Positions 8,450 to 26,903 of a stretch of DNA of 64,000 nucleotides are shown here, in pieces (within the stretch, counting starts at the first letter, position 1; every line of letters starts with the position of its first letter). The notes beneath the pieces were generated by a model, which saw nothing but the letters and a program-made list of their open reading frames with translations, did no database searches and was not told the DNA's origin. Made by a program: the position numbers and the translations under genes. The DNA lies in IMG/VR virus record IMGVR_UViG_3300044712_002668, positions 1 to 64,000 of that record, one strand, 5' to 3'.

Positions 8450-9976
8450 ATGAATATACAGAAATTATCTTCTCTTATACAAGGTACCGCTAAACAACTT
8501 CACAATAGCGAGAAATTACCTTTACCGCTTTTAGCAGTTAAAGCTCGTAAAGCTGCTGAAAGCCGTCCAATGGATATTCCAATTGTCAGTACCGCTCAGG
8601 TATTAACAAAAATGGCATCCAATCAAACGTTTATCAGTAGATCCGAGTTTGCTGAAGTTCTAAATAGCTTTAAAACACCAAGTTCAAAGTTGGCTGATGT
8701 ATTCGCTGAAGAACTAGGACAGAATGAACTTGATAAACCAAAGTTGTTTCAACGCGATTCAAATGAAGGTATGTCATTGGACCGTGATTATGATCGTTTG
8801 GCAGATCCTGTTTTAGCAAACGCTTTGAGCGGTGCTTTTTCAGAAACAAGAGAAGCTAAATTATATTCAAATGCAGAAGCTGAGAAGGCGCATAAATCCT
8901 GTTATGCACAGTTGCTAAGTGTTGGTTTGCCATCTCGTAGCATTACAACGTTTGCTGGTAGAAATGATATAATCATATGCCAAGCTTCCTATGAGAGTCC
9001 AAAGGGACAAGCTCATGTTTTGGTGCCAGTTGAAATCAAAGAAGGAAAAGCACTTCTACCATCAATGTTTTTGACAAGATTTGGATTCCGTGAGATCACC
9101 AAGGAAAATGTAGCGGCGCATGTTTTTGATGTTGCTGGAAAATCTTTCAAGGTAGATGGCGAGAATTTATTGAATGTTATAGCTGAGGCTAAACATGGAG
9201 TAAGAAAAGTTGCCAGCGATGTAGAGATGGCGGCAATCAAGCTGGCTTCTGAGAAGGGTAGAGCAGCTTTGGATCCAAGCCATGTTGTGTATGCAGAGCT
9301 TGATACTGATAAGCCTGCGGGCGTTCAGTTACCACAAATACCACTTACACAAGAAGAGGATACGTTTGCTAGTAAACTAAGTAATCCTGATGGTGTAGCA
9401 CGTTTTGTACATGGGGATAAGCTGGTTGAAGCTGCCAGACACATGCTGGTTTCTAAATTGGCAGGAATGTCATACAGGAACGTACAGGTAAAGGTAGCAG
9501 ATGTTGAGGATAAGAAGATATTCTTCAATGTGGCTATTGGCACTCATACTGGTTTGAAGGTACCTGTTGATATAAAGGGTGGAAACGCGATGCCACCAAA
9601 GGTAGTTATTGCTGATGGGCAGATTAAAGGGTTTTCTGCAACAGCAATCAATGATTTCGTTCAAAGCGGTCATGGTGGAGATAAGAGGGCTCTTGCAGCA
9701 GCATCTCCTACTTATGATATGAAACCAACAGAGCTTTTGGATGTTGTAAAACAATCAGTAGCCGAGGGTAATTATTTGAGAGCTGAGGAGGCTATAAATG
9801 TGCTTGGAGAGATTGATACTTCAGCCCAGCAGGTAGCATTGGCTCATTTTATGTCAAACATATACGAACCAGGAAAAGAACCTTCAAAACAAATCAAGGT
9901 TGCTGCATCAAAACCGGTGCAAGATCTTCCTGTTACATTTATGACTCACAAGATTTTCTTTCCTGAAGGAGAATAA
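8450..9976 (+). CDS. Putative virion (head) protein
   Basis: 508 aa; contains RKVA-S and IKVA-A motifs; no recognised family. Confidence 0.7.
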   Translation: MNIQKLSSLIQGTAKQLHNSEKLPLPLLAVKARKAAESRPMDIPIVSTAQVLTKMASNQTFISRSEFAEVLNSFKTPSSKLADVFAEELGQNELDKPKLFQRDSNEGMSLDRDYDRLADPVLANALSGAFSETREAKLYSNAEAEKAHKSCYAQLLSVGLPSRSITTFAGRNDIIICQASYESPKGQAHVLVPVEIKEGKALLPSMFLTRFGFREITKENVAAHVFDVAGKSFKVDGENLLNVIAEAKHGVRKVASDVEMAAIKLASEKGRAALDPSHVVYAELDTDKPAGVQLPQIPLTQEEDTFASKLSNPDGVARFVHGDKLVEAARHMLVSKLAGMSYRNVQVKVADVEDKKIFFNVAIGTHTGLKVPVDIKGGNAMPPKVVIADGQIKGFSATAINDFVQSGHGGDKRALAAASPTYDMKPTELLDVVKQSVAEGNYLRAEEAINVLGEIDTSAQQVALAHFMSNIYEPGKEPSKQIKVAASKPVQDLPVTFMTHKIFFPEGE

Positions 9977-10905
9977 TGGCTATTTCAATGGATTTAAGAG
10001 TTCTAGCTCGCAAGCTGGAGAAGAGCAGTGATGACTTATTGGTTAATGCGGCAGCAAAAGATCCTAATATTTTTGATAAAGTTGCCCAGGCTGTAGCCGC
10101 TGCTTCAACCTTACTTGAAGAAGTTGCAAATGATTTGGATGCCTCTCAATCTAATGAAATAAAACCAGAACAACTGGATGAAATAGCAGCATTAGCTTCT
10201 TCATTTTATGAGAGTGGAAATCCATTATTGAAAAAGCAGGCTTCTGTATTGGATGAGATATTGCTGTCTATTGCAGCTCCAAAAAACGCTATAGCTGAAT
10301 CTAAGAGAGTTAGTGAAGATGAGATTAATAAACTCAGAGCAAAGCGCAGGGGAGAGGCTGTTAAGGAGTTATATCAAGATCCAAAAGAAGCTCTTGATAA
10401 GATGAACCTTGTAAAAGAGCAAACTGATGCGGTCAAGAAGCAGGTAAAGCGTTATGCCCCATTGGAGGCTCCATTACAGACACGGTATGCACCTGATATG
10501 CCAGGTGTTATGATGACAAGAATTTCTGATCATATTTACCAAGATTTAGTTACTGGTAAGATTTATGACTTCAAGGCTGGATATACAACAGTTAAGGGAA
10601 ATAAAATTCCAGGTTCTTCTGTTGAAAATCAAACCGCTGCTCTGGGAGATCAGCGTCATGGCAATGCCATGTTTGAAACTCGTGAAAGTATTATGAATAG
10701 AATGGCTTCTGATGAAATTGACTTTATAAAACAGGCTGGTGATAAGATAAATATTGCCAAACAATTTTTGAAAGATGCCTCTGAGTTTTATCCTGAGAAG
10801 AAAGCGTTGGCAATCGAAGTGGTAGATAAATATCTATCAAATGATGATATGACACTTTCTTTGGACCTCTTGGATGGTCCAAAAAAAAAACTCATGAGGT
10901 GGTAG
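9976..10905 (+). CDS. Putative head protein/leader; 0-frame product ending just after an A10 slippery run
   Basis: 309 aa; KKQA-S, NRMA-S and IKQA-G motifs; ends ...GPKKKLMRW*. Confidence 0.75.
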   Translation: MAISMDLRVLARKLEKSSDDLLVNAAAKDPNIFDKVAQAVAAASTLLEEVANDLDASQSNEIKPEQLDEIAALASSFYESGNPLLKKQASVLDEILLSIAAPKNAIAESKRVSEDEINKLRAKRRGEAVKELYQDPKEALDKMNLVKEQTDAVKKQVKRYAPLEAPLQTRYAPDMPGVMMTRISDHIYQDLVTGKIYDFKAGYTTVKGNKIPGSSVENQTAALGDQRHGNAMFETRESIMNRMASDEIDFIKQAGDKINIAKQFLKDASEFYPEKKALAIEVVDKYLSNDDMTLSLDLLDGPKKKLMRW

Positions 10906-10951
10906 GTTTAAGCAGTTATGCTGCTTTCTTCCCTCCAACAGCACAACCTCA
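10879..10951 (+). other. Candidate -1 ribosomal frameshift / slippage site
   Basis: CCA AAA AAA AAA CTC (A10 at 10881-10890); -1 frame is open from the run into the 2096-aa ORF; downstream pairings AAGCAG/CTGCTT and TGAGGT/ACCTCA. Confidence 0.6.
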
Positions 10952-13900
10952 AATTGATGAGATACTTGATAAATACAAGGCTTTATCAATTTCATATGAG
11001 GAATGCAAAAAGCAATTAATAGAGCTTGGACGTTCTCTTAAGTTGCCAGAGGCTTTGCTGGAACATGAAGTGAAGCTTTTGATTCAAAACGATAGTCAAA
11101 ATAATTTCCCACCAGAAGCCACTAAGGCAGTTAATGATATTTTAGAGTGGTATAAGAAAGATCCAATGAATAAAGCGAAAGCTATTAGCGCTTTATATCA
11201 TTTAGCAGCCGAATATAATGTACCTAATGTTAATTATATAGTACATCGTATTATTAAAGAGTTTGAAGCTGAAAACTCTCTTGTACCACAATTGCCAGCT
11301 ATACCAGGAAGAGAGTCATTTGTTGGGGTGGAAAATGAATTTGATAGTACCATAATAGATTTATGGCAAGGTATTGAAACACCAGAAACAGCCTTTATAA
11401 TATTAGACCGTTTATTAATTCATAATCCACAATATACTAAAAATGAAAAAGCAAGAGAAAAGGTTATAAATCCGATAATTGAGTATGTTGAAGGAATGCG
11501 TGGGCACACAGCATTTACACCAGAAACAGAAAGTACTTTTTCTGAGCAAATTCCAACAGAGATAAATAGTGATTTATTGAGCCCTGAAGTTCAGGCTACC
11601 AAGAAATTCCGTGCCCACCAGATTGGTCTTGAAAGATATGACTCAGAAACACTGAAACACATTGAAAATGTGTTTGATTTATTGAGAAGCTCTACTATCT
11701 CAAAGGAAGAAGCTTTTAATAAATTGTTCTTGGTTATTAAGAAATTCTTATCTACAAAGAAGAATTATACGGAGATTCCTGGCGAATTGGATGCTTGGTC
11801 AGAACAGCATACAAGAGCTCTACTTAATGCTGAGTATAATAGGATTCAGCAACAAAAAAAGAAAGAGATGGCTGATAATAGGCTTAAAGAGTGTTCTCCA
11901 AGACATATTCTTGGAGCGCCAATTAATTTTTCAGACCCAGCAGTAGCTAATAAAGTAAGGAGATTATATCATCTGTTTACTAATGGTAAATTACCATGGA
12001 AAACATATCGTGCTGAGTTATTAAAAATTGGTATTGATGGTGATACACTTCCTGAAGAGAATGATATTCAAAATGCTGTAGAAGAGTTGATAACTCGTGT
12101 ATATAGTTTCAGTATAACATGGAGTGATTTTACCAGGAACATGATATTGCTTGGCAAAAATCGTAAAGATATACTTGAAATTGCAGAGAATCTGTTCAAG
12201 GACAATCAAATTACCGAGCATCAATTAACAGAGAGAACTTTGTTTGTTCTTTTGGCTTTGAAAGGATATGAACAAGGAGCCTGGAAAGCTTTTGAAAATT
12301 TCATGAAGGCAAAGGATCTTCCAGATGGAGATGAAAATAAACAGACAATACAACGGTTTGAGAGTAAGCTTGAAACAATGGGTCTCAACAAAAACGAGAT
12401 TGAAATGTTTATCAAGCTATCAGGTGTAACAACTTTTTATGAGTTGGTTCCAAAACTTACAGGTAATAATATCCTTGTAAGAATAGAAATTGATAGAAAA
12501 CTAACCGGTGAACCTGAATGGTCAAGGGTAATTATAAACGGTGCAAGAGAGTCTTTACCCCTAAAGAGCAAGACACTTAAAACTGGTATTTACAACATTG
12601 TTTTTGATGTTTGTGGTTATAAACAATTATCTCAAATTTTCAATCTTGATTTGCCAGAGTCTATGCCAGCGGAGTCTCCAAAGAAAGAACACTGCGTTGA
12701 TATTTGGGTTGCCAATCCATTATTTCCTGAGAAATGGTTGTTTTTCAAATCTGTACCACTTGAGGTGGATGCTAGCCAAGCAAAAATTGTACGTAGATTT
12801 GTAAAGCAAATTGAAAGTGTAACTGACACGGTTGAAGCTAGAACCAATCTATTAGTCAAATACAGTGCAATTGAGTTTTTGAAAACTCTGGATATTGCAG
12901 AGGAAGCAAAAGCTCTTGGATCTGATTATGGAAAGCTAACGCCAGAGGTATTATCTGGTATTTTAGGTTGCTTCAAACAAGCCAGGGATACAACTCATCC
13001 AGGTGATAAGCCTGGTGTTCAATGGGATTTGACCAATGAAGATCATGTAAATGACCTCATTGCTAAAGCCAATAATTTATGGAATGATCGCTTTTTGAGC
13101 GCAAATGTAGGCGAAAATCTTAATAAGATGATTTCCTTGGATACTTTCAAGGTTATATTCTCCTTGTTCAATAAAATAACGTCAACTGTAGATCCTCCAG
13201 AGGGAGATACATGGAATGTTGAAGACAAGGAACAAGCTGGTACTTTAGCGTCCAAGATAAAAGAAAGCATAGATCAAACTTATACAACTCGTAAGATTTA
13301 TAGCCTTGATAAGACTGTTATTACAAGTATTATTACAAGAATATATAATGATATAATGCATAACACAATGCCATTGGATATGGCATTGCCAGAATCTACT
13401 GAGAGTGTTGAACAGGATCTTTCAAAATTCTGGGATTTATCAAACCCTGATCATGTTGCATATCTTACAGAGAAAGCCAAGCAAAAATGGGATGATTTGA
13501 TAACACAGATAATATCAGCTCCAGCAATAAAGGATCCTGAGAATCCAGATATCAAAACAAGAAATGATTTATATCTTGAATTTATGTTATATGGTTTTCC
13601 TAAGTTGAAAGAACAGATGGAAAATGAGAAGAAAGAAGAACAAGTTGTGGTAGAACCCGCAACACCTTCTGCACCAGCAAAGGCTAGAAGATTAACAAAA
13701 GAGGAAAAAGCAGCTAAAGAAGCATCTCAAAAGAGAAATATTGATATTATCAAACAAATGACTGAAAGAAGCTTTGTTGCCAGAAGTATGTTTGGTAATT
13801 TCTCAAGAGAGCAACGTGAAAAAGAATGGAACAAAATTTGGCAAGAGATGTGTGCCGAAAGTCGTGATTGGATTCTTTTATCAGCGGTTGAGGAAAAGGG

Positions 13901-16900
13901 CACACAAATTGATGGTAAAAAGCTTGTATCAGAAGAAATACAACGCAGACTTGCTGAAAAGATGAAGCTTGGAACACTTTCTCCAGAAACGCTTGATTTA
14001 GACAAGATTTCTGAAGAAATCTTGAGCAATCCTGAGTATGATACATTATTCAATTTCATAAAGAAAAACTGGGTAAGATCATCTGGTGATTTGAATGCAA
14101 AGGGACTATCTGACGATGACCTTCAGAGAGAAACTTTGCGTTGGTTTAAGGAAAGCGGAGATGCCTTATTGTTATTGGCTGTTTTGAAATATTGGTATAT
14201 GGGTGTTCATAATGAGCGTATCAAAAAGAATGTTCAAGCCAAGAGCGCTGGAGCGCAAAAATTGGTAGCAGCTCAAGGTGTTACACTTGATAAAATGCAT
14301 TTATGGATGCAAAAAATCCAAGATTTGGCAGCCTATGCTCCAACACATTATCACGCAGTATATAAATGTATCATTGCATTGGTAGCTAAAGCTGTAAAAT
14401 TGTTGAGTATTGCAATTGATATAGCAAATCCTGAAAAAATTAAAACGGAACAATCCTTTTCTTTATCGAAAGAATTGAAGAGTGAAATGACAGTTGTTTC
14501 ACCTGATGATCCTGAGTTGTTTGCGGAAGCTGAGCGTCTTGGTGATTATGGTCATTTCTTACCAATGATGTTGAAGATAACAGATAATGGTAAGCTACCT
14601 GTAGAAATTCATGCACCTGTAGAACATATGAAAGACATTACTTCATTGGATTCTTCTGTTCAAAAAGTAATAAGAAACCCAGCGCTTGGAGGCGATTTAC
14701 GAACTGAAGAGGGTTTGAAGATCAAGGTACGTAATTTATATGAAGGTATAAATGCCATGTTGAGAATCATGGTCAATGTACAGGCTAGATTAACATCTCC
14801 AGTTCAAGACATTTCTAATCTTGTAGCTTTGAAATTGTACTCAATCCACAAGAAACTTGATGAAATGTTAAAACCAGTAGTGTTCTTGTGTGAAAATGCA
14901 TTGCGTAAACTTCTTACAAAAGAAGTGGTAATTAGAAATGTTGTTGGCAGGTCTCAAATGCAAGGAAATCAGGCGTATTATAATGCGCTTGGTTCTGCAG
15001 AATTAGGTAAAAAGACATTTGATCCAGTAGAAGGTGTAAGTAGCCGAGTATTGGGTATTGCCAACGCATACCTGAGTGATCAGCCAATTCGTTTGCAAAA
15101 ACTGGATGAAAAAATCAATCTGAGTGATGCTCAAGAGGCTGCTTTATATCCAGCTCAAGTTATGAGAATTTGGAAGAGAGATGAGTTACAACAGGATGGC
15201 TCTACCAAAACAATGGTAACTGAGGAATATATAAATGTTTATGAATACTATAATGTGTTCGATAAAATTAAAAAAGATGAAGATTTCCAGACTTTTGATA
15301 AGACCAGATCTGCAAAGATTATCAAAACAATGAAAGAACATTATTGTCAGAATCCATATCTTCGTAGAGAATTTGAAAATGGTAGAACCACTACATGGAA
15401 AGATGTATGTGATAATTATAGAAAAGATCCAGCAATGTCACCTCCAATGTTGACTTTGAAACAAATTGAGGATCTTGACGCTGGAAAGTTAGTTTATAAT
15501 GGAAAACAAGTTGGACCTTATGCGGTTTATAGAAAGCAGGTAAAACCAGATTTAACTAATCTAAGGGTTGACTTCAAAACTGATACTGACTTTTCAAGAT
15601 TGAAAGGACCTTGGTGTGTAAGCAATGATTGTCAAAATGATTTGTTTATTTGGAGCCGTTTGGTTGGTCAATGGTATTTGAAGCAAAAAGGTATTGAACC
15701 AACTTCAGAGAAAGAGCTTGATAAGGCTTATCAAGAATGCAAAAAAGTGTGGGCAAAATTGATTGTTGCTTCAAAGGGTAAAGTTCAATCAGGTAAGGAA
15801 GATAAAGAAATTACCGCTGATTTGCGTGCCGTATTTGAACAACAGAATGCTGTCAGCGCTTCTATGCATGCCTTTGGATTGGTAAGTCCATTTGATTATA
15901 ACCCTGGTAGCAGACAGGCCGTATATATAATAAACATTCCAATGGTTGATTGGGCCATAGAGCGTGAACTTGCTAAGCGTAAGGGTCTTCCTATGCCCAA
16001 GAAAGAAGAGGAAGATGAGTTGCCAAGTGGTGGTGATGAAGGTGAAGAGGATTTGCCAGAAGGTGATTGGACTGAGGAAGGAAGTGATCTTGAACATAAG
16101 TACAGGGATATAGAGCCTGGTCATTATGTAGGACAAGCAGGAGGAGAGGCTAAGTATCTTTCAAATGAAGAGATAAAGGCACGCAGGCAGGCAAGAAAGG
16201 ATTTAGAAAAGGCACAGGTTCAACTTGAGGAGGAAGATGATATTCCGGAAGAAACTGGACCAGCGGTAAGATTAACTGGTGAAAAACCAGCTTTACCAGA
16301 ACCTAAGCCTGGAACTTTTAAGGATACACAGAAGGCATTCCCATCTAAATTGAAGAGTGTTTTAACTACAGTACCATCTTCAATTTTGGGAATTGATGAA
16401 CCACCAGTACCTAAATTGCCAGAAAGAAGTTTATCACGTTTTGATAAACCTGTTGAAATTAAACAAGAAGAAGAGCCAGAAACAGCATTGGTACCATCTA
16501 GTGAAGACGAATCATTAGAGTCTTTATTGGCTGATTTACCAGAGGGTGATGGTGGAGAAGGTGGTGGAGAGAGTGGGGCTGCTAAAAAGATTCTACATCC
16601 CGTTCAACAAGTAAGACAGGTACATAGAAATTTTCTTGATGATTTCGGTAATGTTTCTGGTGCAGGTCCTATATCACCAAATGCTTTACAAGACACTAGA
16701 AAGTTTAGCGTATCTTCTTGGATTGAAATGGTAGCAAAGGAGTTTGGTAACGATCCAGATATTACTCCTGAAAAACCATTACACTCCCCTCTTACTAAAC
16801 CTTTGGCTTGGGAAAGATTAACTAATTCTGTATCTATTGGGGCAGCATCTGATGATATAAAGAAAGGTTTGACTCCAGAACAAAGTAAAGAATTTGATAT

Positions 16901-17189
16901 TATCATGGCTTTGAAAGCAGATCCTGCAAAGAAAGAAGAGTATGCTCAAAAGTATAAGCTGTACATAAGTAGATTCTTCTTGAAGAAGGGTTTTGTACCA
17001 CCTGCTGCATTGAATTATGTTGCAATTCAATTGAAGAAAATGGCTTCTGAAGTGGAAGACAATCCAGTTAGAGCCGGAATTTTGAATGAAGAAGCAAAGT
17101 ATGCCAATGAATTATTCGGTGATAAAAAGTGGTCTGAAGTTGGAGCAATGATAATTTCAAATCAAAAGTCTATTGGAACAAGGAAGTAA
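10899..17189 (+). CDS. Giant hypothetical protein, probably made as a -1 fusion to the upstream ORF
   Basis: 2096-aa ORF; GTG start has no upstream SD; helical repeats and acidic linkers. Confidence 0.8.
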   Translation: MVGLSSYAAFFPPTAQPQIDEILDKYKALSISYEECKKQLIELGRSLKLPEALLEHEVKLLIQNDSQNNFPPEATKAVNDILEWYKKDPMNKAKAISALYHLAAEYNVPNVNYIVHRIIKEFEAENSLVPQLPAIPGRESFVGVENEFDSTIIDLWQGIETPETAFIILDRLLIHNPQYTKNEKAREKVINPIIEYVEGMRGHTAFTPETESTFSEQIPTEINSDLLSPEVQATKKFRAHQIGLERYDSETLKHIENVFDLLRSSTISKEEAFNKLFLVIKKFLSTKKNYTEIPGELDAWSEQHTRALLNAEYNRIQQQKKKEMADNRLKECSPRHILGAPINFSDPAVANKVRRLYHLFTNGKLPWKTYRAELLKIGIDGDTLPEENDIQNAVEELITRVYSFSITWSDFTRNMILLGKNRKDILEIAENLFKDNQITEHQLTERTLFVLLALKGYEQGAWKAFENFMKAKDLPDGDENKQTIQRFESKLETMGLNKNEIEMFIKLSGVTTFYELVPKLTGNNILVRIEIDRKLTGEPEWSRVIINGARESLPLKSKTLKTGIYNIVFDVCGYKQLSQIFNLDLPESMPAESPKKEHCVDIWVANPLFPEKWLFFKSVPLEVDASQAKIVRRFVKQIESVTDTVEARTNLLVKYSAIEFLKTLDIAEEAKALGSDYGKLTPEVLSGILGCFKQARDTTHPGDKPGVQWDLTNEDHVNDLIAKANNLWNDRFLSANVGENLNKMISLDTFKVIFSLFNKITSTVDPPEGDTWNVEDKEQAGTLASKIKESIDQTYTTRKIYSLDKTVITSIITRIYNDIMHNTMPLDMALPESTESVEQDLSKFWDLSNPDHVAYLTEKAKQKWDDLITQIISAPAIKDPENPDIKTRNDLYLEFMLYGFPKLKEQMENEKKEEQVVVEPATPSAPAKARRLTKEEKAAKEASQKRNIDIIKQMTERSFVARSMFGNFSREQREKEWNKIWQEMCAESRDWILLSAVEEKGTQIDGKKLVSEEIQRRLAEKMKLGTLSPETLDLDKISEEILSNPEYDTLFNFIKKNWVRSSGDLNAKGLSDDDLQRETLRWFKESGDALLLLAVLKYWYMGVHNERIKKNVQAKSAGAQKLVAAQGVTLDKMHLWMQKIQDLAAYAPTHYHAVYKCIIALVAKAVKLLSIAIDIANPEKIKTEQSFSLSKELKSEMTVVSPDDPELFAEAERLGDYGHFLPMMLKITDNGKLPVEIHAPVEHMKDITSLDSSVQKVIRNPALGGDLRTEEGLKIKVRNLYEGINAMLRIMVNVQARLTSPVQDISNLVALKLYSIHKKLDEMLKPVVFLCENALRKLLTKEVVIRNVVGRSQMQGNQAYYNALGSAELGKKTFDPVEGVSSRVLGIANAYLSDQPIRLQKLDEKINLSDAQEAALYPAQVMRIWKRDELQQDGSTKTMVTEEYINVYEYYNVFDKIKKDEDFQTFDKTRSAKIIKTMKEHYCQNPYLRREFENGRTTTWKDVCDNYRKDPAMSPPMLTLKQIEDLDAGKLVYNGKQVGPYAVYRKQVKPDLTNLRVDFKTDTDFSRLKGPWCVSNDCQNDLFIWSRLVGQWYLKQKGIEPTSEKELDKAYQECKKVWAKLIVASKGKVQSGKEDKEITADLRAVFEQQNAVSASMHAFGLVSPFDYNPGSRQAVYIINIPMVDWAIERELAKRKGLPMPKKEEEDELPSGGDEGEEDLPEGDWTEEGSDLEHKYRDIEPGHYVGQAGGEAKYLSNEEIKARRQARKDLEKAQVQLEEEDDIPEETGPAVRLTGEKPALPEPKPGTFKDTQKAFPSKLKSVLTTVPSSILGIDEPPVPKLPERSLSRFDKPVEIKQEEEPETALVPSSEDESLESLLADLPEGDGGEGGGESGAAKKILHPVQQVRQVHRNFLDDFGNVSGAGPISPNALQDTRKFSVSSWIEMVAKEFGNDPDITPEKPLHSPLTKPLAWERLTNSVSIGAASDDIKKGLTPEQSKEFDIIMALKADPAKKEEYAQKYKLYISRFFLKKGFVPPAALNYVAIQLKKMASEVEDNPVRAGILNEEAKYANELFGDKKWSEVGAMIISNQKSIGTRK

Positions 17190-17954
17190 ATGGCAGATTT
17201 CAAGAAAATTGTTGATCATCCAGAAAAACAAACGATTATAACAAAGCTGGTAAGCGGAGACAGCCCCAAAGCTGTCTCCAAATACCTCAAAGATAAATAT
17301 GAACAACCAGATGAGGCGCATTTAAGACTTTCAGCTACACTTTTACAAGAATTTATTGATACATATGCAGATCATCACGGCTATATAAAAAAAATTATAT
17401 CAGATGATCTATCTACCAAACTTGATAAAAAAATAGCAGAATCTCTCTTGAATAACAAGGAGTGGAGAAAGCGTCTTGAAGAGACAGCAGAAGAACATAT
17501 TGATTTTAAAAAGAAGCTAGCCCATTTATTGACTATTCTTGAAGCTCGTGCAGAGCAGTTGTTTGATTTGATTCAGTCAAACCCTGAAGGAATAAAAACA
17601 GATTATATATTTACCAAGTATATGGAACTGCTTATGCAGGCTATAGAAAAGGGAGATAAGATAGTCAATGAAAAAGCTGATATCAAGATTGAACATTCTT
17701 ATACAGTTCAAATGGTTGAACAACAATCCATTATATTTCAGCAAGCCATTAAACGGAGCCTGGAACGTCTTGGTCCAAAATATGCTTCCATGTTTATGGA
17801 TATTTTACAAGAGGAAATAGCAAAAATAAACCCACAAAGTATTTCACAGGCAATTCCTGTCATTAACTTAGAAAAGGATAATAAAGCAGTTGATAAGTTG
17901 CTTGACTCTGCAACAAATTTAACTGATAAATTTTTAGATGATGAGGATGAATGA
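17190..17954 (+). CDS. Hypothetical helical protein (possible small terminase-like)
   Basis: 254 aa; N-terminal HTH-like block followed by coiled coil; function call weak. Confidence 0.6.
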   Translation: MADFKKIVDHPEKQTIITKLVSGDSPKAVSKYLKDKYEQPDEAHLRLSATLLQEFIDTYADHHGYIKKIISDDLSTKLDKKIAESLLNNKEWRKRLEETAEEHIDFKKKLAHLLTILEARAEQLFDLIQSNPEGIKTDYIFTKYMELLMQAIEKGDKIVNEKADIKIEHSYTVQMVEQQSIIFQQAIKRSLERLGPKYASMFMDILQEEIAKINPQSISQAIPVINLEKDNKAVDKLLDSATNLTDKFLDDEDE

Positions 17955-19926: not shown

Positions 19927-20664
19927 ATGAAAATACGTGATGTATTACTCAATGTCAAGATACTGGCAAATGAAAACAATTTGTCAGAGCCTTTTATTGT
20001 TGGTGGTTTGCCACGTGATAAAGTCTTGAAAAGATCAAGAATGGTTGATGATGTTGATATTACTACTGGAGATGATACCATACAACAGCTTGCAATATTA
20101 ACATCTCAAAAATATAAAGCTTATCCAGTAAATTTCCCAGATGGTCATTATCAAGTTGCGATTGGACAAGTGCGCTTTGATTTTTCTTCAAATTACAGAT
20201 CTCCTGATGTTGAATATTTTCTTGAAAGAGCAGGGGTAAAAAATCCTACTCCAATGCAGCTTGAATTATTCAGTCGTGATTTTACATGCAATACACTTAC
20301 TATTGCTATGAATTTGCGAGTGATTGAGGATCAAACAGGCTTGGGATTGAATGATATAAATAAAAAAATTCTAAGGACACCATTGCCTCCAAGAATTACT
20401 CTTAGAGATGATCCTAGAAGGGTTATACGAGCTATCTATCTTGCTGCAAAGCTTGGGTTTACAATAGAGGAAGACATAATAGAATGGGCTAAAAGTAATC
20501 CTGATAGAATAAAGGAAAAAGTAAAACCTGGATTTTCAAGAAATAAGTTATTATCAGCTTTCAGATATAATTCAAAAAATACTTTAAATTATATAACAAG
20601 TATGAATTTGTGGGATGTGGTGATTATACCAAAAGATTTACTTCCTTATAGGGTGTCAAGATGA
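19927..20664 (+). CDS. Class II tRNA nucleotidyltransferase / poly(A) polymerase family protein
   Basis: FIVGGLPRD, DVD catalytic pair, SRDFTCN, DDPRRVIRAIYLAAKLGF; 245 aa, shorter than typical full-length CCA enzymes. Confidence 0.88.
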   Translation: MKIRDVLLNVKILANENNLSEPFIVGGLPRDKVLKRSRMVDDVDITTGDDTIQQLAILTSQKYKAYPVNFPDGHYQVAIGQVRFDFSSNYRSPDVEYFLERAGVKNPTPMQLELFSRDFTCNTLTIAMNLRVIEDQTGLGLNDINKKILRTPLPPRITLRDDPRRVIRAIYLAAKLGFTIEEDIIEWAKSNPDRIKEKVKPGFSRNKLLSAFRYNSKNTLNYITSMNLWDVVIIPKDLLPYRVSR

Positions 20665-22350: not shown

Positions 22351-22683
22351 ATGAGAGATATGTCTAAATTTTATCGTACAGATGAGGTATCAAGAACAAC
22401 AACTGGTTGTCCATTGTGGCTTGAGCGTTTTGCTGAACAAATGGCAGTACAAGATGCCAAGACTGCTGTAGAAGTTGCCAGAGATCGTTCTCGTACTCCT
22501 TCTGTATTTGAACAAATGAGTTCTATTGTCAGTGGAGCCGCTCCAAGAGCAGGATCAGTAGAAGATGTTGTAAAGGAATATCAAAAACGTACCGGTCTTG
22601 ATTCTTACATTAAATCTTCAAGCTTACAAAGCGCTGCCCAGTCAATTATTGCAAACGCTGAGGCTGAAGAAAAAAAAGTATAA
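22351..22683 (+). CDS. Hypothetical protein; 0-frame product of frameshift cassette
   Basis: AGGTG RBS; ends GAA AAA AAA GTA TAA. Confidence 0.75.
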   Translation: MRDMSKFYRTDEVSRTTTGCPLWLERFAEQMAVQDAKTAVEVARDRSRTPSVFEQMSSIVSGAAPRAGSVEDVVKEYQKRTGLDSYIKSSSLQSAAQSIIANAEAEEKKV

Positions 22684-22716
22684 TGACCAATAACGAGAAA
22701 CCTACGTTATTGGTCA
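22671..22716 (+). other. Programmed -1 ribosomal frameshift signal
   Basis: Heptamer A AAA AAA (22671-22677), 6-nt spacer GTATAA, perfect 12-bp hairpin TGACCAATAACG/CGTTATTGGTCA; -1 frame open into the next ORF. Confidence 0.75.
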
Positions 22717-23018
22717 ACCATCCTGAAATAGAGAGTTTTATAAATAATTTGATTGATACTAATCATGGTATTCAAATACCAGCTATATTACATTCTATTC
22801 GTGAAATGTTTTCGCGAGATGGTGTAACTCAACAATATCTTGATGATGTTGAATTAAAAACATATATAAGTAATATTTTGATGCAAAAAAATCCAATTGA
22901 TATTGGAGTTTCCAACAATATCGGACGTGGAGTTGGAACAGTAATCGAGAATACACACGGACAAGATCAGAACAAAGAATGGTCTACTAATCTTCAGCCT
23001 GTAAAATCTGCTACTTAA
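22683..23018 (+). CDS. Hypothetical protein; -1 frame extension of 22351 ORF
   Basis: 111 aa; no clear SD; start codon lies at the base of the hairpin. Confidence 0.7.
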   Translation: MTNNEKPTLLVNHPEIESFINNLIDTNHGIQIPAILHSIREMFSRDGVTQQYLDDVELKTYISNILMQKNPIDIGVSNNIGRGVGTVIENTHGQDQNKEWSTNLQPVKSAT

Positions 23019-23076: not shown

Positions 23077-24957
23077 GTGGCAAGTAGACATCAAGTTGTA
23101 GATGGGTTTTCACATTTATTTAATAGTTTCAAGGATAGTGTTCTAAATACAGATCCTGTTTATTTTGTTGAAAATAATTTAAATGTAGATGGAAATCCTT
23201 TAAAATTAAGAGGTAATGGTTATAAACCATTCGTTGATATTTATAGATACATAGCCCTTACAGCTCTTGAGCCAACCTCAAAGCCAATTGTGCTTGTTAA
23301 GGGCAGACAAGTAGGGGCTACAACTATGGCTGCAGCGTTAGAGTCATACTTTGTAGCCTGTGGTTTATTTGGAACAAATGGTCGCCCACCAATGCGTATC
23401 ATGCATTTGTTTCCAACATTATCATTAGCAGCCGCTTATACTAAAGATAAACTTGATCCTATAATAACAGCATCCAGACCAATGCCTGGAGAAATGAAAT
23501 CTAATGGGTTATTGAAATCATTTTTGGAAACCAAGCTTGATTCTTCAAACAGTTCTTATAACAATACTCACTTTAAAAAGTTTGTAAACAATAACCAGGT
23601 TTGGATTGAGTCGACTGGTTTAGATGGCGATAGGGTGCGCGGTCGCACCTGTGATCTTGCTATGTTCGACGAAGTTCAAGATATTTCAGATTTAGCTATG
23701 GGTGCTGTATCAAAAATACTTACCCAAGCAAAGTATGGTCCACCTGAAGGTGTTCAAGTATATTTTGGAACACCAAAGCAAAAAGGAGGATCATATTGGA
23801 AAATGTGGCAACATTCTACTCAGAATTATTATCACCTTCGCTGTGAGAAATGTGGTGAGTATTTCCCGTTGTACAGACCAGATGTTAACTGGGAGGATGT
23901 GTGGGTTTATTTTAAAACCGTAAAGTGTCCTACATGTGGTTGTGAACAAGATAAAATTGAAGCCGCAGAACGTGGAAAGTGGATTCCAATGAATGATGAA
24001 AATGATCCCGATATCACATTCGTTGGTTTTCATATAAATCAATTATATATTCCAAAGTTTTCAAGAGAAGATATTGAGAAGACAAAGCCTGAGAAAAGCC
24101 CAGTAAATACTGAGCGTATTTATATGAATGAGGTTATTGGAGAGTTTTATGATGGAGAGGGAGGCACTCTTTCAATAGAACAAATTCACGAGAAATGCGC
24201 TGATAAGGATAGGGCTTTTGCAACTCAAATATCTCCAGCAGAAGGTAAACGTGTTTATGTAGGGTTTGACTGGGGACAAAGAGGTGAGCTGGATGCTCGT
24301 GCAGGACGTCGTGTAGGACGTTCTTATAGCTGTGCTGTGGTTCTTACAGCAGATGGCCCAAACCTTTTCAATATTGAATTTGCTACTCGCTTGATGCGTA
24401 ATGATGATGAAACAAAAATTGAAATTGTAGAAGAGATGTTTAGACGCTACAGTATTTCATTAGCTGTAGGCGATATCGGTGATGCTTTCGGTTTGACTCA
24501 AAAATTACAAAGAATGTATGATGATAAATTCTTGGCCAGCCGTTCTTCTCATAAAGTAAATGGTCATATAAAATATTCTTCTGATGAATTTCCAAAAATA
24601 ATTGTATTTGAAAAAGATTTTTATATAGGAGAAATAATAGGATTATTAAAAAATGGAAATGTAAAATTTCCTTATAAAAGCTTTAATAGAATTGATTGGT
24701 TGGTAAATCATTGTGCAAGCATGGACATAAAAGTTACTAAAGATAAGTCTGGAGAGTCAATAAAGCATTATGTTAAAGGTAGCAGTCCAAACGATGGTTT
24801 GATGGCATTGCTGAATGCTTATTTGGCTTGGAAGTTTGATGTAACCCAAGGTTTCAAGATTCACAATCCAATGCATATGAAATATGATGTAGCAACGACA
24901 GGAAAAGAGGTACAAGCTGTACTTGGTTATTTGCCACGTTTCTCTAATAAAATTTGA
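23077..24957 (+). CDS. terL: Terminase large subunit
   Basis: Walker A region VKGRQVGATT, Walker B RGRTCDLAMFDEVQD, coupling motif FGTP, lambda-gpA-like zinc finger CEKC...CPTC, nuclease YVGFDWG. Confidence 0.9.
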   Translation: MASRHQVVDGFSHLFNSFKDSVLNTDPVYFVENNLNVDGNPLKLRGNGYKPFVDIYRYIALTALEPTSKPIVLVKGRQVGATTMAAALESYFVACGLFGTNGRPPMRIMHLFPTLSLAAAYTKDKLDPIITASRPMPGEMKSNGLLKSFLETKLDSSNSSYNNTHFKKFVNNNQVWIESTGLDGDRVRGRTCDLAMFDEVQDISDLAMGAVSKILTQAKYGPPEGVQVYFGTPKQKGGSYWKMWQHSTQNYYHLRCEKCGEYFPLYRPDVNWEDVWVYFKTVKCPTCGCEQDKIEAAERGKWIPMNDENDPDITFVGFHINQLYIPKFSREDIEKTKPEKSPVNTERIYMNEVIGEFYDGEGGTLSIEQIHEKCADKDRAFATQISPAEGKRVYVGFDWGQRGELDARAGRRVGRSYSCAVVLTADGPNLFNIEFATRLMRNDDETKIEIVEEMFRRYSISLAVGDIGDAFGLTQKLQRMYDDKFLASRSSHKVNGHIKYSSDEFPKIIVFEKDFYIGEIIGLLKNGNVKFPYKSFNRIDWLVNHCASMDIKVTKDKSGESIKHYVKGSSPNDGLMALLNAYLAWKFDVTQGFKIHNPMHMKYDVATTGKEVQAVLGYLPRFSNKI

Positions 24958-24971
24958 TATATAGGTATTTG

Positions 24972-26903
24972 ATGGTAAACTTCATTAATAATAACAAAAC
25001 TAGAGCTGAAGAGCTGATTGAAAAAAATGGTCATATCGTGACTAGATCTGATACTTTTTCTAAAACAGCAACAGCTAATGTACTTCCTGAAATTTCCAGT
25101 AGAGCTGCAAAAGGAGTAAGTGAACAGCGGCGTGAGATGATGGAGCTGCAATTTGAAGCAGGGGAGTTCAGAGAAAAGGGGACTTCAAATTACAACCCAG
25201 GAAGGAGAGGTTCATCAAACAATGAAGAAAATATGATGAGACAAACCCAAGCTGGATTTGTTTCAAAGGCTTCAAAACCATTATATAAACAAGCTGATGG
25301 AACGTCCCCTATGTCTGGAGCCAGTAGTGCTACCAGTAGTGGTTGGAGAGGTTCCAATGATAGCGGCAGGCAAATTCCAGAAGTTTACTCGCCACTTTGG
25401 TTGAATTCAAACCTCAACCTTCCAAGAGATAGAGCTACCATCAATGCTTGGAGCAGATCGTTTTTTGCTTTGAACCCAATCGTTCACAACGCGATTACTT
25501 TACATTCAACATATCCAATTGCAAAATTAAATATCAAATGTAAAAACTCAAAGGTTGAGAAGTTTTTCAATCAAATGATGGATGAGATTGATTTGATGAA
25601 TATGTGTGTACAAATCGCTCAAGAATATTGGACTCTTGGAGAAGCATTTGTATATGGTGAATTGGATGAGGGCAAAGGGCGTTGGAGCCGTTTGATGATT
25701 TTGAATCCCGATTATGTAAACGTACAGCGTTCTGTAATTGCTGCAGAACCTATTATCAGTTTACGTCCTGATGAGAATTTGAAGCGTGTTGTTTTTGGTA
25801 ATAAGCCACCGGATATTCAACAGAGAAAACAGCTTGAACCATCCATTATAGAACACGTTAGAAGAAATGAAAATATACCATTGAATAATTTTTACGTTTC
25901 TCATATTGCCAGGAGAATAAGCCCTTATGAAATAAGAGGCACTGGTCTTATTGTTAGTTGTTTTAGAGCCTTGATGCTTATGGATAAATTCCGTGAGTGT
26001 AAGTATGTACAAGCGGATAACATGGTTAATCCGCTCACATTGGTAAAGATTGGAAATCAGGATTTCAGACCAACACCAGTAGATCTGGAGCATTGGAGAA
26101 ATGTATTTGAAGAAGCTCAATTTGATAAGGATTTCAAAATCTTTACACATGATGCAATTGCGGTTGAGCGTGTAGGCTATGGACAGGGTATTTATGATAC
26201 TAACAATGATGTAGATAAGCTTATAAAAGAAATCTATGTAGGTTTGATGGTACCATCTGTAATCATGGATGGTAGTGATACTACATATGCAACTGGTAGC
26301 GTGGCTTTGGATGTACTTAGACAGCGTTACATGCAATTCCGAAACTATATGTCATCTTGGTTGAGAACCAGGATTTTTGCACCAATTGCTCAAATTAATG
26401 ATTTTTATGAGCGCGTTGATGGTGAAAAAGTACTGATAGTACCAGATGTAGATTGGAATCATATGTCATTATTTGACATGGATTCTTATATAAACAACCT
26501 TGTAAACCTATCTACAGGTGAAGGTCCAGCCAAGCGTGTTTCTGTACAAACATTATATCGCAGTTTGGGTCTTGAATTTGAGGATGAGCGCAGGAAAATA
26601 CGATATGAAGATATAAATGATGCTATTCGTGCTAGGGAGATCGCTGCAATGTCTCGTTATTCTTTGCATGAATTGAAGTCATTGACAATCAATGATGAAA
26701 TTGAAGAGGCAGGTGATGAGCCAGTACCTGGTCAAAGTCCATATGTTTCTGGCGCAGGAGCCCCACCACCAGGAGGTGGAATGGGAGGCATGCCACCGGG
26801 AATGGGTGCGCCACCAGGAATGGGTCCAACTCCAGGAGCACCACCACCAGGACCAATTGGTGGGGGAGGCCCACCAGCTGGAGGCCCTCCACCATCACCT
26901 TGA
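24972..26903 (+). CDS. Portal protein with N-terminal extension and Pro/Gly-rich tail
   Basis: Follows terL; NPIVHNAI, YWTLGEAF, LNPDYV, PYEIRGTGLIVSCFRALM portal-like blocks. Confidence 0.75.
   Translation: MVNFINNNKTRAEELIEKNGHIVTRSDTFSKTATANVLPEISSRAAKGVSEQRREMMELQFEAGEFREKGTSNYNPGRRGSSNNEENMMRQTQAGFVSKASKPLYKQADGTSPMSGASSATSSGWRGSNDSGRQIPEVYSPLWLNSNLNLPRDRATINAWSRSFFALNPIVHNAITLHSTYPIAKLNIKCKNSKVEKFFNQMMDEIDLMNMCVQIAQEYWTLGEAFVYGELDEGKGRWSRLMILNPDYVNVQRSVIAAEPIISLRPDENLKRVVFGNKPPDIQQRKQLEPSIIEHVRRNENIPLNNFYVSHIARRISPYEIRGTGLIVSCFRALMLMDKFRECKYVQADNMVNPLTLVKIGNQDFRPTPVDLEHWRNVFEEAQFDKDFKIFTHDAIAVERVGYGQGIYDTNNDVDKLIKEIYVGLMVPSVIMDGSDTTYATGSVALDVLRQRYMQFRNYMSSWLRTRIFAPIAQINDFYERVDGEKVLIVPDVDWNHMSLFDMDSYINNLVNLSTGEGPAKRVSVQTLYRSLGLEFEDERRKIRYEDINDAIRAREIAAMSRYSLHELKSLTINDEIEEAGDEPVPGQSPYVSGAGAPPPGGGMGGMPPGMGAPPGMGPTPGAPPPGPIGGGGPPAGGPPPSP

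What the first reader, a model, noticed from the sequence alone, without database searches (positions are those of the whole stretch)
22669..22716. Textbook -1 frameshift cassette directly upstream of terminase
Seen: GAA AAA AAA GTA TAA with heptamer A-AAA-AAA (22671-22677), 6-nt spacer and a perfect 12-bp hairpin (22684-22695 / 22705-22716, 9-nt loop). The -1 frame reads EKK-SIMTNN... giving a 222-aa fusion versus a 110-aa 0-frame product. Established: phage -1 frameshifts are best known in tail assembly chaperones (lambda G/GT). Inference: a recoded gene pair in head assembly or packaging, which I do not recall being described at this position.
Basis: partly seen in the sequence, partly recalled or inferred. 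Interest (0 to 1): 0.8.

Follow-up and report, generated by a model that had tools for sequence, protein, structure and literature searches.

The report
Conserved poly-A frameshift site beside terminase
Two small genes just upstream of the large terminase of an uncultured jumbo phage are the two halves of one protein, joined only when the ribosome (or RNA polymerase) slips back one base on a run of A's. Relatives keep this slip site, so the phage probably makes a short and a long form of a packaging-module protein on purpose.

Summary
ORF1 (22351-22683, 110 aa) ends EEKKV-stop. A_AAA_AAA lies in the 0 frame at 22671-22677. After a 6-nt spacer comes a perfect 12-bp hairpin (22684-22716), the only perfect hairpin of 11 bp or more in the 64 kb. 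ORF2 (111 aa) is in the -1 frame.

ORF1 and ORF2 match the N- and C-terminal halves of single proteins of about 215 aa in 80 representative clusters. Synteny orf289-[N/C]-TerL-portal holds in every relative with enough sequence.

In the close clade an A8-A11 run sits at the interdomain linker:
- 11 distinct sequences are split, all with the C-domain in the -1 frame and a stop 1-2 codons after the run.
- 16 are read straight through the run, and both alternative frames stop within 7 codons in the 11 examined.
- In five of the eight split relatives checked the C-domain has no start codon of its own, yet it is under purifying selection.
- All three A8 loci carry an 11-12-bp hairpin 6-7 nt downstream, with unrelated stem sequences in two lineages. 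No locus with a longer run does.

I conclude a programmed -1 recoding site of the dnaX type giving two isoforms: ribosomal in this phage, possibly transcriptional in A10 relatives. The protein's function is unknown. It is a new member of a known kind.

The parts
22351..22683 (+). ORF1, 110 aa: N-terminal domain and 0-frame (short) product, ending ...AEAEEKKV-TAA
   Evidence: BLASTP matches the first ~110-130 residues of 80 of the 89 long (>=190 aa) family representatives, E down to 7e-30.
22660..22663 (+). Shine-Dalgarno-like GAGG, 7 nt 5' of the heptamer; a possible upstream stimulator as in dnaX
   Evidence: Read from the sequence. The two other A8 loci have AGGA 8 nt before the run. This is a 4-mer, so the evidence is weak.
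22670..22677 (+). A8 run; slippery heptamer A_AAA_AAA at 22671-22677 in the 0 frame (Lys-Lys)
   Evidence: An A8-A11 run occupies the same linker position in 27 distinct relatives.
22678..22683 (+). 6-nt spacer GTATAA: one sense codon, then the 0-frame stop TAA (22681-22683). The last A overlaps the ATG of ORF2.
   Evidence: All 11 split relatives have the 0-frame stop 1-2 codons after the run.
22684..22716 (+). Perfect 12-bp stem with 9-nt loop: the downstream frameshift stimulator
   Evidence: Hairpins at the same place with unrelated stem sequence occur in L017 (12 bp) and L018 (11 bp). No T tract follows, so it is not terminator-like.
22677..23018 (+). -1 frame reading (SIMTNNEK...) = C-terminal domain. 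Annotated as ORF2 from ATG 22683, 111 aa. The transframe product is 222 aa.
   Evidence: A profile of this domain finds 105 representatives, 89 of them >=190 aa with the domain at the C-terminus.
23077..24957 (+). Large terminase subunit (context; next gene downstream)
   Evidence: PF05876, E 2.7e-18; phrog_675, E 2.6e-57. The synteny is conserved.

Best explanation
ORF1 and ORF2 are one gene for a two-domain protein of about 220 aa in the terminase-portal module. Its function is unknown. It is expressed as two isoforms through a programmed -1 change of frame at a poly-A tract in the interdomain linker.

In this phage most ribosomes decode Lys-Lys-Val and stop at TAA, giving the 110-aa N-domain protein. 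A fraction pause with the two tRNA-Lys on A_AAA_AAA while the 12-bp hairpin sits 6 nt downstream at the mRNA entrance. These slip back one base and continue as ...EEKK-SIMTNNEK..., giving the 222-aa N+C protein.

Shown here: the anatomy, the homology of the two halves to single proteins, conservation of the slip site and of the -1 arrangement, the absence of start codons in five of eight split relatives, purifying selection on the downstream half, and the link between A8 runs and a hairpin.

Inferred: that slippage happens at all, its efficiency (probably substantial, because close relatives flip between 'fused' and 'split' genomic states as dnaX does), that it is ribosomal rather than transcriptional in this phage, and that the protein acts in DNA packaging.
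For: 1. One gene in relatives. A profile of ORF2 finds 105 representative proteins; 89 are >=190 aa and carry the domain at the C-terminus. ORF1 matches the N-terminus of 80 of those same proteins, and every match ends before residue 130. The 222-aa fusion equals the typical family length (69 members are 190-245 aa).

2. Conserved slip site. Eleven distinct split sequences were found (window, L017, L018, L003, L004, L014, L016, L019, L034, L047, L048). All have the C-domain in the -1 frame, none in +1, and all have the stop 1-2 codons after an A8 or A10 run. Sixteen distinct sequences are read through an A9-A11 run at the same place.

3. No independent start. In L017, L018, L014, L016 and L019 no ATG, GTG or TTG lies between the run and the conserved start of the C-domain. 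The -1 reading reproduces the linker peptide KKK-S-[L/I]-x-[A]-E seen in fused members.

4. Selection. dN/dS of the C-domain among split loci is 0.05-0.41 with dS saturated, so these are not pseudogenes. The run is all-AAA although Lys codons in the window are only 61% AAA. A>=8 runs are rare: 3 in 64 kb and 1-5 per 6-21 kb relative locus, one of them at this site in all but one (L045).

5. Stimulator. All three A8 loci have an 11-12-bp hairpin starting 6-7 nt after the run (-17 to -26 kcal/mol). The window and L017 stems differ on both sides at 9 of 12 pairs and sit in different clades of the C-domain tree. None of the loci with A9 or longer runs has such a hairpin.

6. In the 11 fused loci examined, both alternative frames stop within 7 codons of the run; in 10 they stop within 6, which holds at only 22% of codon positions in the same genes. 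This is the Thermus dnaX layout described in PMC5009743.

7. An independent assembly reproduces the A8.
Against: - There is no direct evidence of a transframe product or of RNA heterogeneity. No RNA run was listed, and the public DNA contigs laid on the region did not span the run.
- The window, unlike five of the eight split relatives checked, has an ATG at 22683 overlapping the stop (TAATG), so some free C-domain could be made by reinitiation.
- A_AAA_AAA is generally less shifty than A_AAA_AAG in E. coli (my own knowledge), and the host and its tRNA-Lys are unknown.
- Only two independent A8 lineages support the link with a hairpin.
- The C-domain tree is poorly resolved, so the number of fused/split switches is uncertain.
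- Function is unassigned.
Confidence: 0.75

Rival explanations
1. Transcriptional slippage is the main mechanism. RNA polymerase stutters on the A/T run and adds one A to part of the transcripts (A8 to A9, A10 to A11). Ordinary translation of those transcripts then gives the fused protein. In fused relatives the slipped transcripts give the truncated protein.
For: - Most relatives carry A10-A11, longer than a ribosomal heptamer needs, and have no downstream hairpin.
- In the fused loci examined, stops lie close by in both alternative frames, as in Thermus dnaX, where slippage gives insertions of different lengths (PMC5009743).
- A second A10 run in the window (10881-10890) splits another gene that is a single ORF in relatives. 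This suggests a general property of A runs in this clade.
- Known precedent: tssM (PMC4256274).
Against: - The window's run is only A8, below the 9 or more typical of efficient bacterial slippage sites (my own knowledge).
- A hairpin 6 nt downstream of the run is a ribosome-specific stimulator. It has no known role in RNA polymerase slippage, yet it is selected in both A8 lineages.
- All 11 split loci need the same shift (+1 nt in the RNA, equal to -1 frame). If deletions were as frequent as insertions, +1-frame arrangements might also be expected.
Confidence: 0.2
2. These are two separate genes after a gene fission. ORF2 is translated on its own from ATG 22683 by termination-reinitiation at the TAATG overlap. 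The hairpin only hides that start until a ribosome finishing ORF1 opens it.
For: - The window has the ATG overlapping the stop and no Shine-Dalgarno sequence of its own.
- The hairpin begins at the T of the ATG.
- Gene callers annotate two genes.
Against: - L017 and L018 have the same hairpin arrangement but no start codon at all before the conserved domain. L014, L016 and L019 likewise have none.
- This does not explain why an all-A run is conserved at nucleotide level in both split and fused relatives, or why the frame is always -1.
- Reinitiation may still add a third product in this phage only.
Confidence: 0.08
3. There is no programmed event. The split is a homopolymer sequencing or assembly error, a recent inactivating indel (pseudogene), or DNA-level length variation of the tract in the phage population (phase variation).
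For: - Homopolymers are error- and mutation-prone.
- The fused and split states differ by a net single-base frame offset at or near the run.
- Contigs from low-depth public runs break at the run.
Against: - Identical A8 in two independent assemblies. Identical A10 sequences recur in 2-3 samples each (L014=L015=L023, L016=L026, L009=L010, L011=L012=L013).
- Eleven distinct split sequences are all -1, which has probability 0.5^11 if they were independent random indels.
- The C-domain is under purifying selection with saturated dS.
- The A8 loci carry a compensating hairpin.
Confidence: 0.05

Closest known systems
E. coli dnaX tau/gamma -1 programmed ribosomal frameshift (A_AAA_AAG, upstream SD-like element, downstream stem-loop)
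   Same: - A lysine heptamer in phase, a stem-loop about 6 nt downstream, and a possible SD-like element upstream.
- Two products that share the N-terminus and differ by C-terminal domain(s).
- A stop right after the shift site.
- Orthologues in which the roles of 0-frame and shifted product are reversed (PMC5009743).
   Different: - An unrelated protein family, in a phage structural/packaging module.
- In the window the long form, not the short one, needs the shift.
- The heptamer ends in A, not G, except L019, which has A_AAA_AAG.
- No match to any Rfam frameshift element.
Thermus thermophilus dnaX, Shigella spa13/mxiE and Citrobacter tssM: transcriptional slippage on A/T runs
   Same: Relatives have A10-A11 runs. 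In the fused loci examined, stops lie close in both alternative frames. Length variants come from one gene (PMC5009743; PMC4256274).
   Different: The window has only A8 plus a ribosome-type downstream hairpin. No RNA data were available to test it.
Lambda G/GT and other tail assembly chaperone frameshifts
   Same: A conserved -1 frameshift near the end of a small phage morphogenesis gene extends it with a second domain. The position is conserved across divergent phages.
   Different: It lies upstream of terminase and portal, not between tail tube and tape measure. There is no sequence or fold similarity. Many relatives encode the fusion directly.
IS3/IS1-family transposase orfA-orfB -1 frameshift (A6G/A7 plus structure)
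   Same: A-rich heptamer, downstream structure, and a fusion protein made only by the shift.
   Different: It is not a mobile element. Synteny is fixed within the phage packaging module.
Phage capsid frameshifts (T7 gene 10A/10B; Lactobacillus phage A2 major head protein)
   Same: Head-module proteins made in two lengths by a -1 shift (cited in PMC10885494).
   Different: Those extend the major capsid protein. This protein is neither a capsid nor a known head protein.

Membership tests
Bacterial-type -1 programmed ribosomal frameshift cassette | X_XXY_YYZ slippery heptamer in phase with the 0 frame | tested here: met
   A_AAA_AAA at 22671-22677; the 0-frame codons are AAA AAA.
Bacterial-type -1 programmed ribosomal frameshift cassette | Stable stem-loop or pseudoknot 5-9 nt downstream of the heptamer | tested here: met
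   A 12-bp perfect stem after a 6-nt spacer, z = -4.9, unique in the 64 kb.
Bacterial-type -1 programmed ribosomal frameshift cassette | The -1 ORF is open from the shift site and encodes a conserved, selected polypeptide | tested here: met
   The -1 frame opens at 22668 and runs to 23018. It is the C-domain of the family. dN/dS is 0.05-0.41.
Bacterial-type -1 programmed ribosomal frameshift cassette | Shift site and stimulator conserved in relatives | tested here: met
   The run is conserved in 27 distinct relatives. The hairpin is present in all 3 A8 loci, with unrelated stem sequences in the two lineages.
Bacterial-type -1 programmed ribosomal frameshift cassette | Transframe protein demonstrated | not testable with these tools
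   No proteomic or reporter data are available.
Transcriptional slippage site | Homopolymeric A/T run of about 9 or more | tested here: not met
   The window has A8. Many relatives have A10-A11, so the feature is met there.
Transcriptional slippage site | Transcripts heterogeneous in run length | not testable with these tools
   No RNA run was listed.
Tail assembly chaperone G/GT frameshift | Gene pair between the major tail/tube gene and the tape measure gene | tested here: not met
   The pair lies between orf289 and TerL/portal in all relatives.
Small terminase subunit (TerS) | Gene immediately upstream of TerL | tested here: met
   The position is conserved in every locus with enough sequence.
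Small terminase subunit (TerS) | Sequence or profile similarity to known TerS families | tested here: not met
   No Pfam or PHROG family matched any of 69 members, even at E<=1. A PDB profile search found nothing.
Small terminase subunit (TerS) | Helix-turn-helix DNA-binding domain plus oligomerisation core | tested here: inconclusive
   The AF2 model is all-helical with two domains, pLDDT 78.5. The C-domain resembles winged-helix domains only weakly (Z about 5, below the tool's noise level). Foldseek found nothing in PDB, BFVD, AFDB or the Atlas.
Rfam frameshift elements (any curated family) | Covariance-model match | tested here: not met
   Only chance-level matches, E 2.9-8.4, far below the gathering scores.
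Intrinsic terminator | GC-rich stem followed by a T tract | tested here: not met
   The stem is followed by ACCATCC, and the scan lists no + strand terminator there.

The most novel reading that the evidence does not exclude
In this clade of uncultured jumbo phages, poly-A tracts in interdomain linkers act as tunable isoform switches in more than one gene: the terminase-adjacent protein and a giant protein of about 2,400 aa.

Evolution would flip freely between 'fused' and 'split' genomic states. It would also swap mechanism: A10-A11 runs read by RNA polymerase slippage, and A8 runs backed by a newly evolved ribosomal stimulator hairpin.

The short and long forms of the terminase-adjacent protein would set a stoichiometry needed for genome packaging.
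Probability: 0.4. Interest if true: 0.75.

Novelty: new member of a known kind. Interest (0 to 1): 0.62.

Why it matters
- **Annotation.** It adds a well-supported recoding site in a gene family and genomic position (next to the large terminase) where the literature I could search describes none. Gene callers split this gene into two 'hypothetical proteins' in at least 11 distinct phage sequences, so annotation of these jumbo phages should join them.
- **Natural experiment.** The family shows the same linker tract in fused and split states, and a hairpin present only where the tract is short. This could help separate ribosomal from transcriptional slippage and show how stimulators arise.
- **Function.** It marks an uncharacterised, conserved two-domain protein as a candidate packaging factor. 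Its N-only to N+C ratio is evidently under selection.

Tried and rejected
- **DNA search.** A blastn search of the region against 50,697 GenBank phages found no match.
- **Single-protein locus scans** with TerL or ORF2 found only the source contig. Alignments were needed.
- **Word-indexed protein search** could not show fused relatives because of its length window. The exhaustive profile search did.
- **Reads.** Read laying had only low-depth Logan contigs, none spanning the run, so tract length could not be checked at read level. No RNA run was listed.
- **Function.** Nothing informative came from Pfam, PHROGs, PDB sequence profiles, Foldseek (PDB, BFVD, AFDB clusters), ESM Atlas by shape or by features, or VIA-align.
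- **TerS comparison.** The nearest cultured phages by TerL (Bacillus phages, about 25% identity) have no annotated TerS. Their 215-aa first gene is unrelated (hhalign probability 0.7%).
- **Terminator reading** of the hairpin was rejected because no T tract follows. There is no Rfam family.
- **Covariation count.** MAFFT misaligned the 3' arms of the three hairpins, so no formal count was run. The pair comparison was read directly from the sequences.
- **Second site.** The N-terminus of the 2,096-aa ORF finds only itself. Its status came from loci anchored on the CCA-adding enzyme gene.
- **tRNA.** The window has no tRNA genes, so no phage tRNA-Lys is visible here.

Full report
**What is there.** The window is the first 64 kb of an uncultured jumbo-phage contig (IMG/VR UViG_3300044712_002668, 336 kb; the JGI scaffold is 455 kb). 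All long ORFs are on the + strand.

At the finding, ORF1 (22351-22683, 110 aa) ends GAA AAA AAA GTA TAA. The A8 run is 22670-22677, and A_AAA_AAA at 22671-22677 is in X_XXY_YYZ phase. After the 6-nt spacer GTATAA come two perfectly complementary 12-nt arms (22684-22695 and 22705-22716) around a 9-nt loop. ORF2 (22683-23018, 111 aa) is in the -1 frame, and its ATG overlaps the TAA. A -1 slip gives ...EEKK-SIMTNNEK... and a 222-aa protein.

The hairpin folds far better than shuffles (z = -4.9, 0 of 200 as good). It is the only perfect stem of 11 bp or more in the window, where 0.1 is expected for 12 bp. A>=8 runs number only three in 64 kb. An independent assembly from another sample carries the identical sequence. 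TerL (PF05876, phrog_675) starts at 23077 and the portal follows.

**The two ORFs are one gene elsewhere.** ORF2 has two relatives at 46% identity in the word-indexed database. In both, the upstream ORF ends in an A10 run, with ORF2 in the -1 frame and only a GTG or TTG 'start'.

An exhaustive profile search with the three sequences found 105 representative proteins. Of these, 89 are 190 aa or longer (69 are 190-245 aa) and carry the ORF2 domain at the C-terminus. ORF1 matches the N-terminal ~110-130 residues of 80 of those same proteins, with E down to 7e-30. The 222-aa fusion is therefore the normal architecture, and the window's gene is interrupted exactly at the interdomain linker.

The order orf86-orf167-orf289-[N/C]-TerL-portal holds in every related locus long enough to show it. 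TerL is about 65-72% identical and the N and C domains about 40-55%.

**The slip site is conserved and the frame relation is not random.** I fetched about 70 related loci and classified each by the frames of the N and C domains and the longest A run between them.

- In the close clade nearly every sequence has an A8-A11 run a few codons before the C-domain.
- Eleven distinct sequences are split. The window, L017 and L018 have A8. L003, L004, L014, L016, L019, L034, L047 and L048 have A10.
- All eleven have the C-domain in the -1 frame and none in +1. In all, the 0-frame stop follows 1-2 codons after the run (typically A-run, GTN, TAR).
- Sixteen distinct sequences read straight through an A9-A11 run at the same place.
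- More distant relatives are plain fused genes, mostly without a run.
- Identical tract lengths recur in two or three independent samples for several sequences.

Among the eight split loci examined (the window plus seven relatives), five relatives have no ATG, GTG or TTG in the C-domain frame between the run and the conserved start of the domain (L017, L018, L014, L016, L019). There the domain can be made only by shifting from the upstream frame. The shifted reading regenerates the linker peptide KKK-S-[L/I]-x-A-E that fused members encode directly.

The C-domain of split loci is under purifying selection (dN/dS 0.05-0.41) while synonymous sites are saturated. So these are not decaying pseudogenes. 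The all-A tract has been kept against synonymous drift, even though AAA makes up only 61% of Lys codons in the window.

**Stimulator.** Folding the 50-60 nt after the run in each distinct locus shows a sharp split.

- The three A8 loci have an 11-12-bp hairpin starting 6-7 nt after the run: window -17.8, L017 -25.9, L018 -17.3 kcal/mol.
- No locus with A9-A11 has a comparable stem at that spacing.
- The window and L017 stems sit in the same register but differ on both sides at 9 of 12 pairs. I read this directly from the sequences, because MAFFT could not align the arms.
- The two lineages lie in different parts of the C-domain tree.
- L017 and L018 differ by dS about 1.5 in the domain, yet keep the stem apart from one A-U to G-U change and one terminal mismatch.

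A stem 6 nt downstream of the heptamer is the classical ribosomal stimulator. It is not a terminator and matches no Rfam family. All three A8 loci also have GAGG or AGGA 7-8 nt before the heptamer or run, as in dnaX. For a 4-mer this is weak evidence.

**Fused relatives look built for the reverse outcome.** In the 11 fused loci examined, both alternative frames hit a stop within 7 codons of the run, and in 10 of the 11 within 6. Only 22% of codon positions in the same genes have both stops within 6. That is the layout described for Thermus dnaX, where slippage yields the truncated product. The review by Atkins et al. notes that dnaX orthologues exist with the roles of standard and shifted product reversed, which is expected when efficiency is near one half (PMC5009743). 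The same logic fits here: every lineage with the tract can make both an N-only and an N+C protein, and only the genomic default differs.

**Mechanism and rivals.**

- *Ribosomal -1 frameshifting.* This is my best explanation for this phage, with its A8 run and hairpin.
- *Transcriptional slippage.* This is a serious alternative for the A10-A11 relatives without a hairpin, and it could contribute here. I could not test it because no RNA run was listed.
- *Independent translation of ORF2 by reinitiation at TAATG.* This is possible only in the window. It does not explain the relatives without start codons or the conserved tract.
- *Assembly error, pseudogene or DNA-level phase variation.* The evidence against these is the reproducibility across samples, the uniform -1 arrangement, the selection on the C-domain and the compensating hairpin. 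Read-level tract length could not be checked, because the contigs did not span the run.

**Function.** No Pfam or PHROG family matches any of 69 full-length members, and a PDB profile search gives nothing.

An AF2 model of a natural fused member (P0018, pLDDT 78.5) shows two helical domains (residues 25-108 and 120-177), a linker, and a conserved but unstructured tail. Foldseek and Atlas searches found only another uncharacterised phage protein. VIA-align gives winged-helix-like matches to the C-domain at Z about 5, below the tool's stated noise level.

From position alone I regard it as a candidate packaging factor, possibly a small-terminase equivalent. It fails the homology test for TerS and I do not file it there.

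**Comparison and novelty.** It works like dnaX or IS3-type -1 frameshifting, and in relatives perhaps like Thermus dnaX or tssM slippage. It is not a member of those gene families or of the tail-chaperone G/GT system.

Full-text searches found no frameshift described in a gene next to terminase. The Atkins review mentions terminase only for possible bypassing in phage Hau3. The PRFect paper's main text never mentions terminase and names no terminase-adjacent gene among known phage frameshifts.

I rate it a new member of a known kind. It has an unusually clean comparative signature and an instructive alternation between fused and split states and between long tracts and a short tract with a hairpin.

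Noticed in passing
window 10881-10890 (ORFs 9976-10905 and 10899-17189): A second A10 run sits at the junction of a 309-aa ORF (ending ...GPKKKLMRW-stop) and a 2,096-aa ORF that is in its -1 frame and has only a GTG 'start'. A -1 shift would give a protein of about 2,404 aa.

In close relatives the 309-aa homologue is the N-terminus of one long ORF (756-1,432 aa). L037 and L038 have an in-frame A10, and L043 an A9, at the same position. This is probably a second programmed slippage site. Neither ORF has a Pfam match.
   Followed up: partly
window 17387-17394: The third and last A>=8 run of the window lies in frame inside the 254-aa ORF 17190-17954 (...YIKKII...). L049 and L050 have an A8 at the same relative position of their homologue. 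Its significance is unknown.
   Followed up: partly
L008, L015, L017, L020, L025, L004 (TerL homologues); window 23077-24957 for comparison: In several relatives the TerL gene is interrupted, in frame, after about residue 190-200 by inserts of about 0.5-2.2 kb, while the window's TerL is continuous. In-frame inserts at one site suggest inteins. I did not examine this further.
   Followed up: no
window 24954-26903: The portal protein (phrog_16240) ends in a Gly/Pro-rich low-complexity tail of about 60 residues.
   Followed up: no
window 19927-20664: A CCA-adding/poly(A) polymerase-family enzyme (PF01743 in the precomputed annotation) is conserved 2.7 kb upstream at 58-64% identity in the close clade. 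It proved a good anchor for fetching relatives. The window has no tRNA genes.
   Followed up: partly
whole window; runs X1-X10: Near-identical sequence occurs in rhizosphere, freshwater and wetland metagenomes. Relatives come from contigs of up to 392 kb, so this is a widespread clade of environmental jumbo phages with no cultured member in the GenBank phage set.
   Followed up: partly
L019 316-332: One split relative has the run phased as A_AAA_AAG, the exact E. coli dnaX heptamer, followed by TAC TAG.
   Followed up: no
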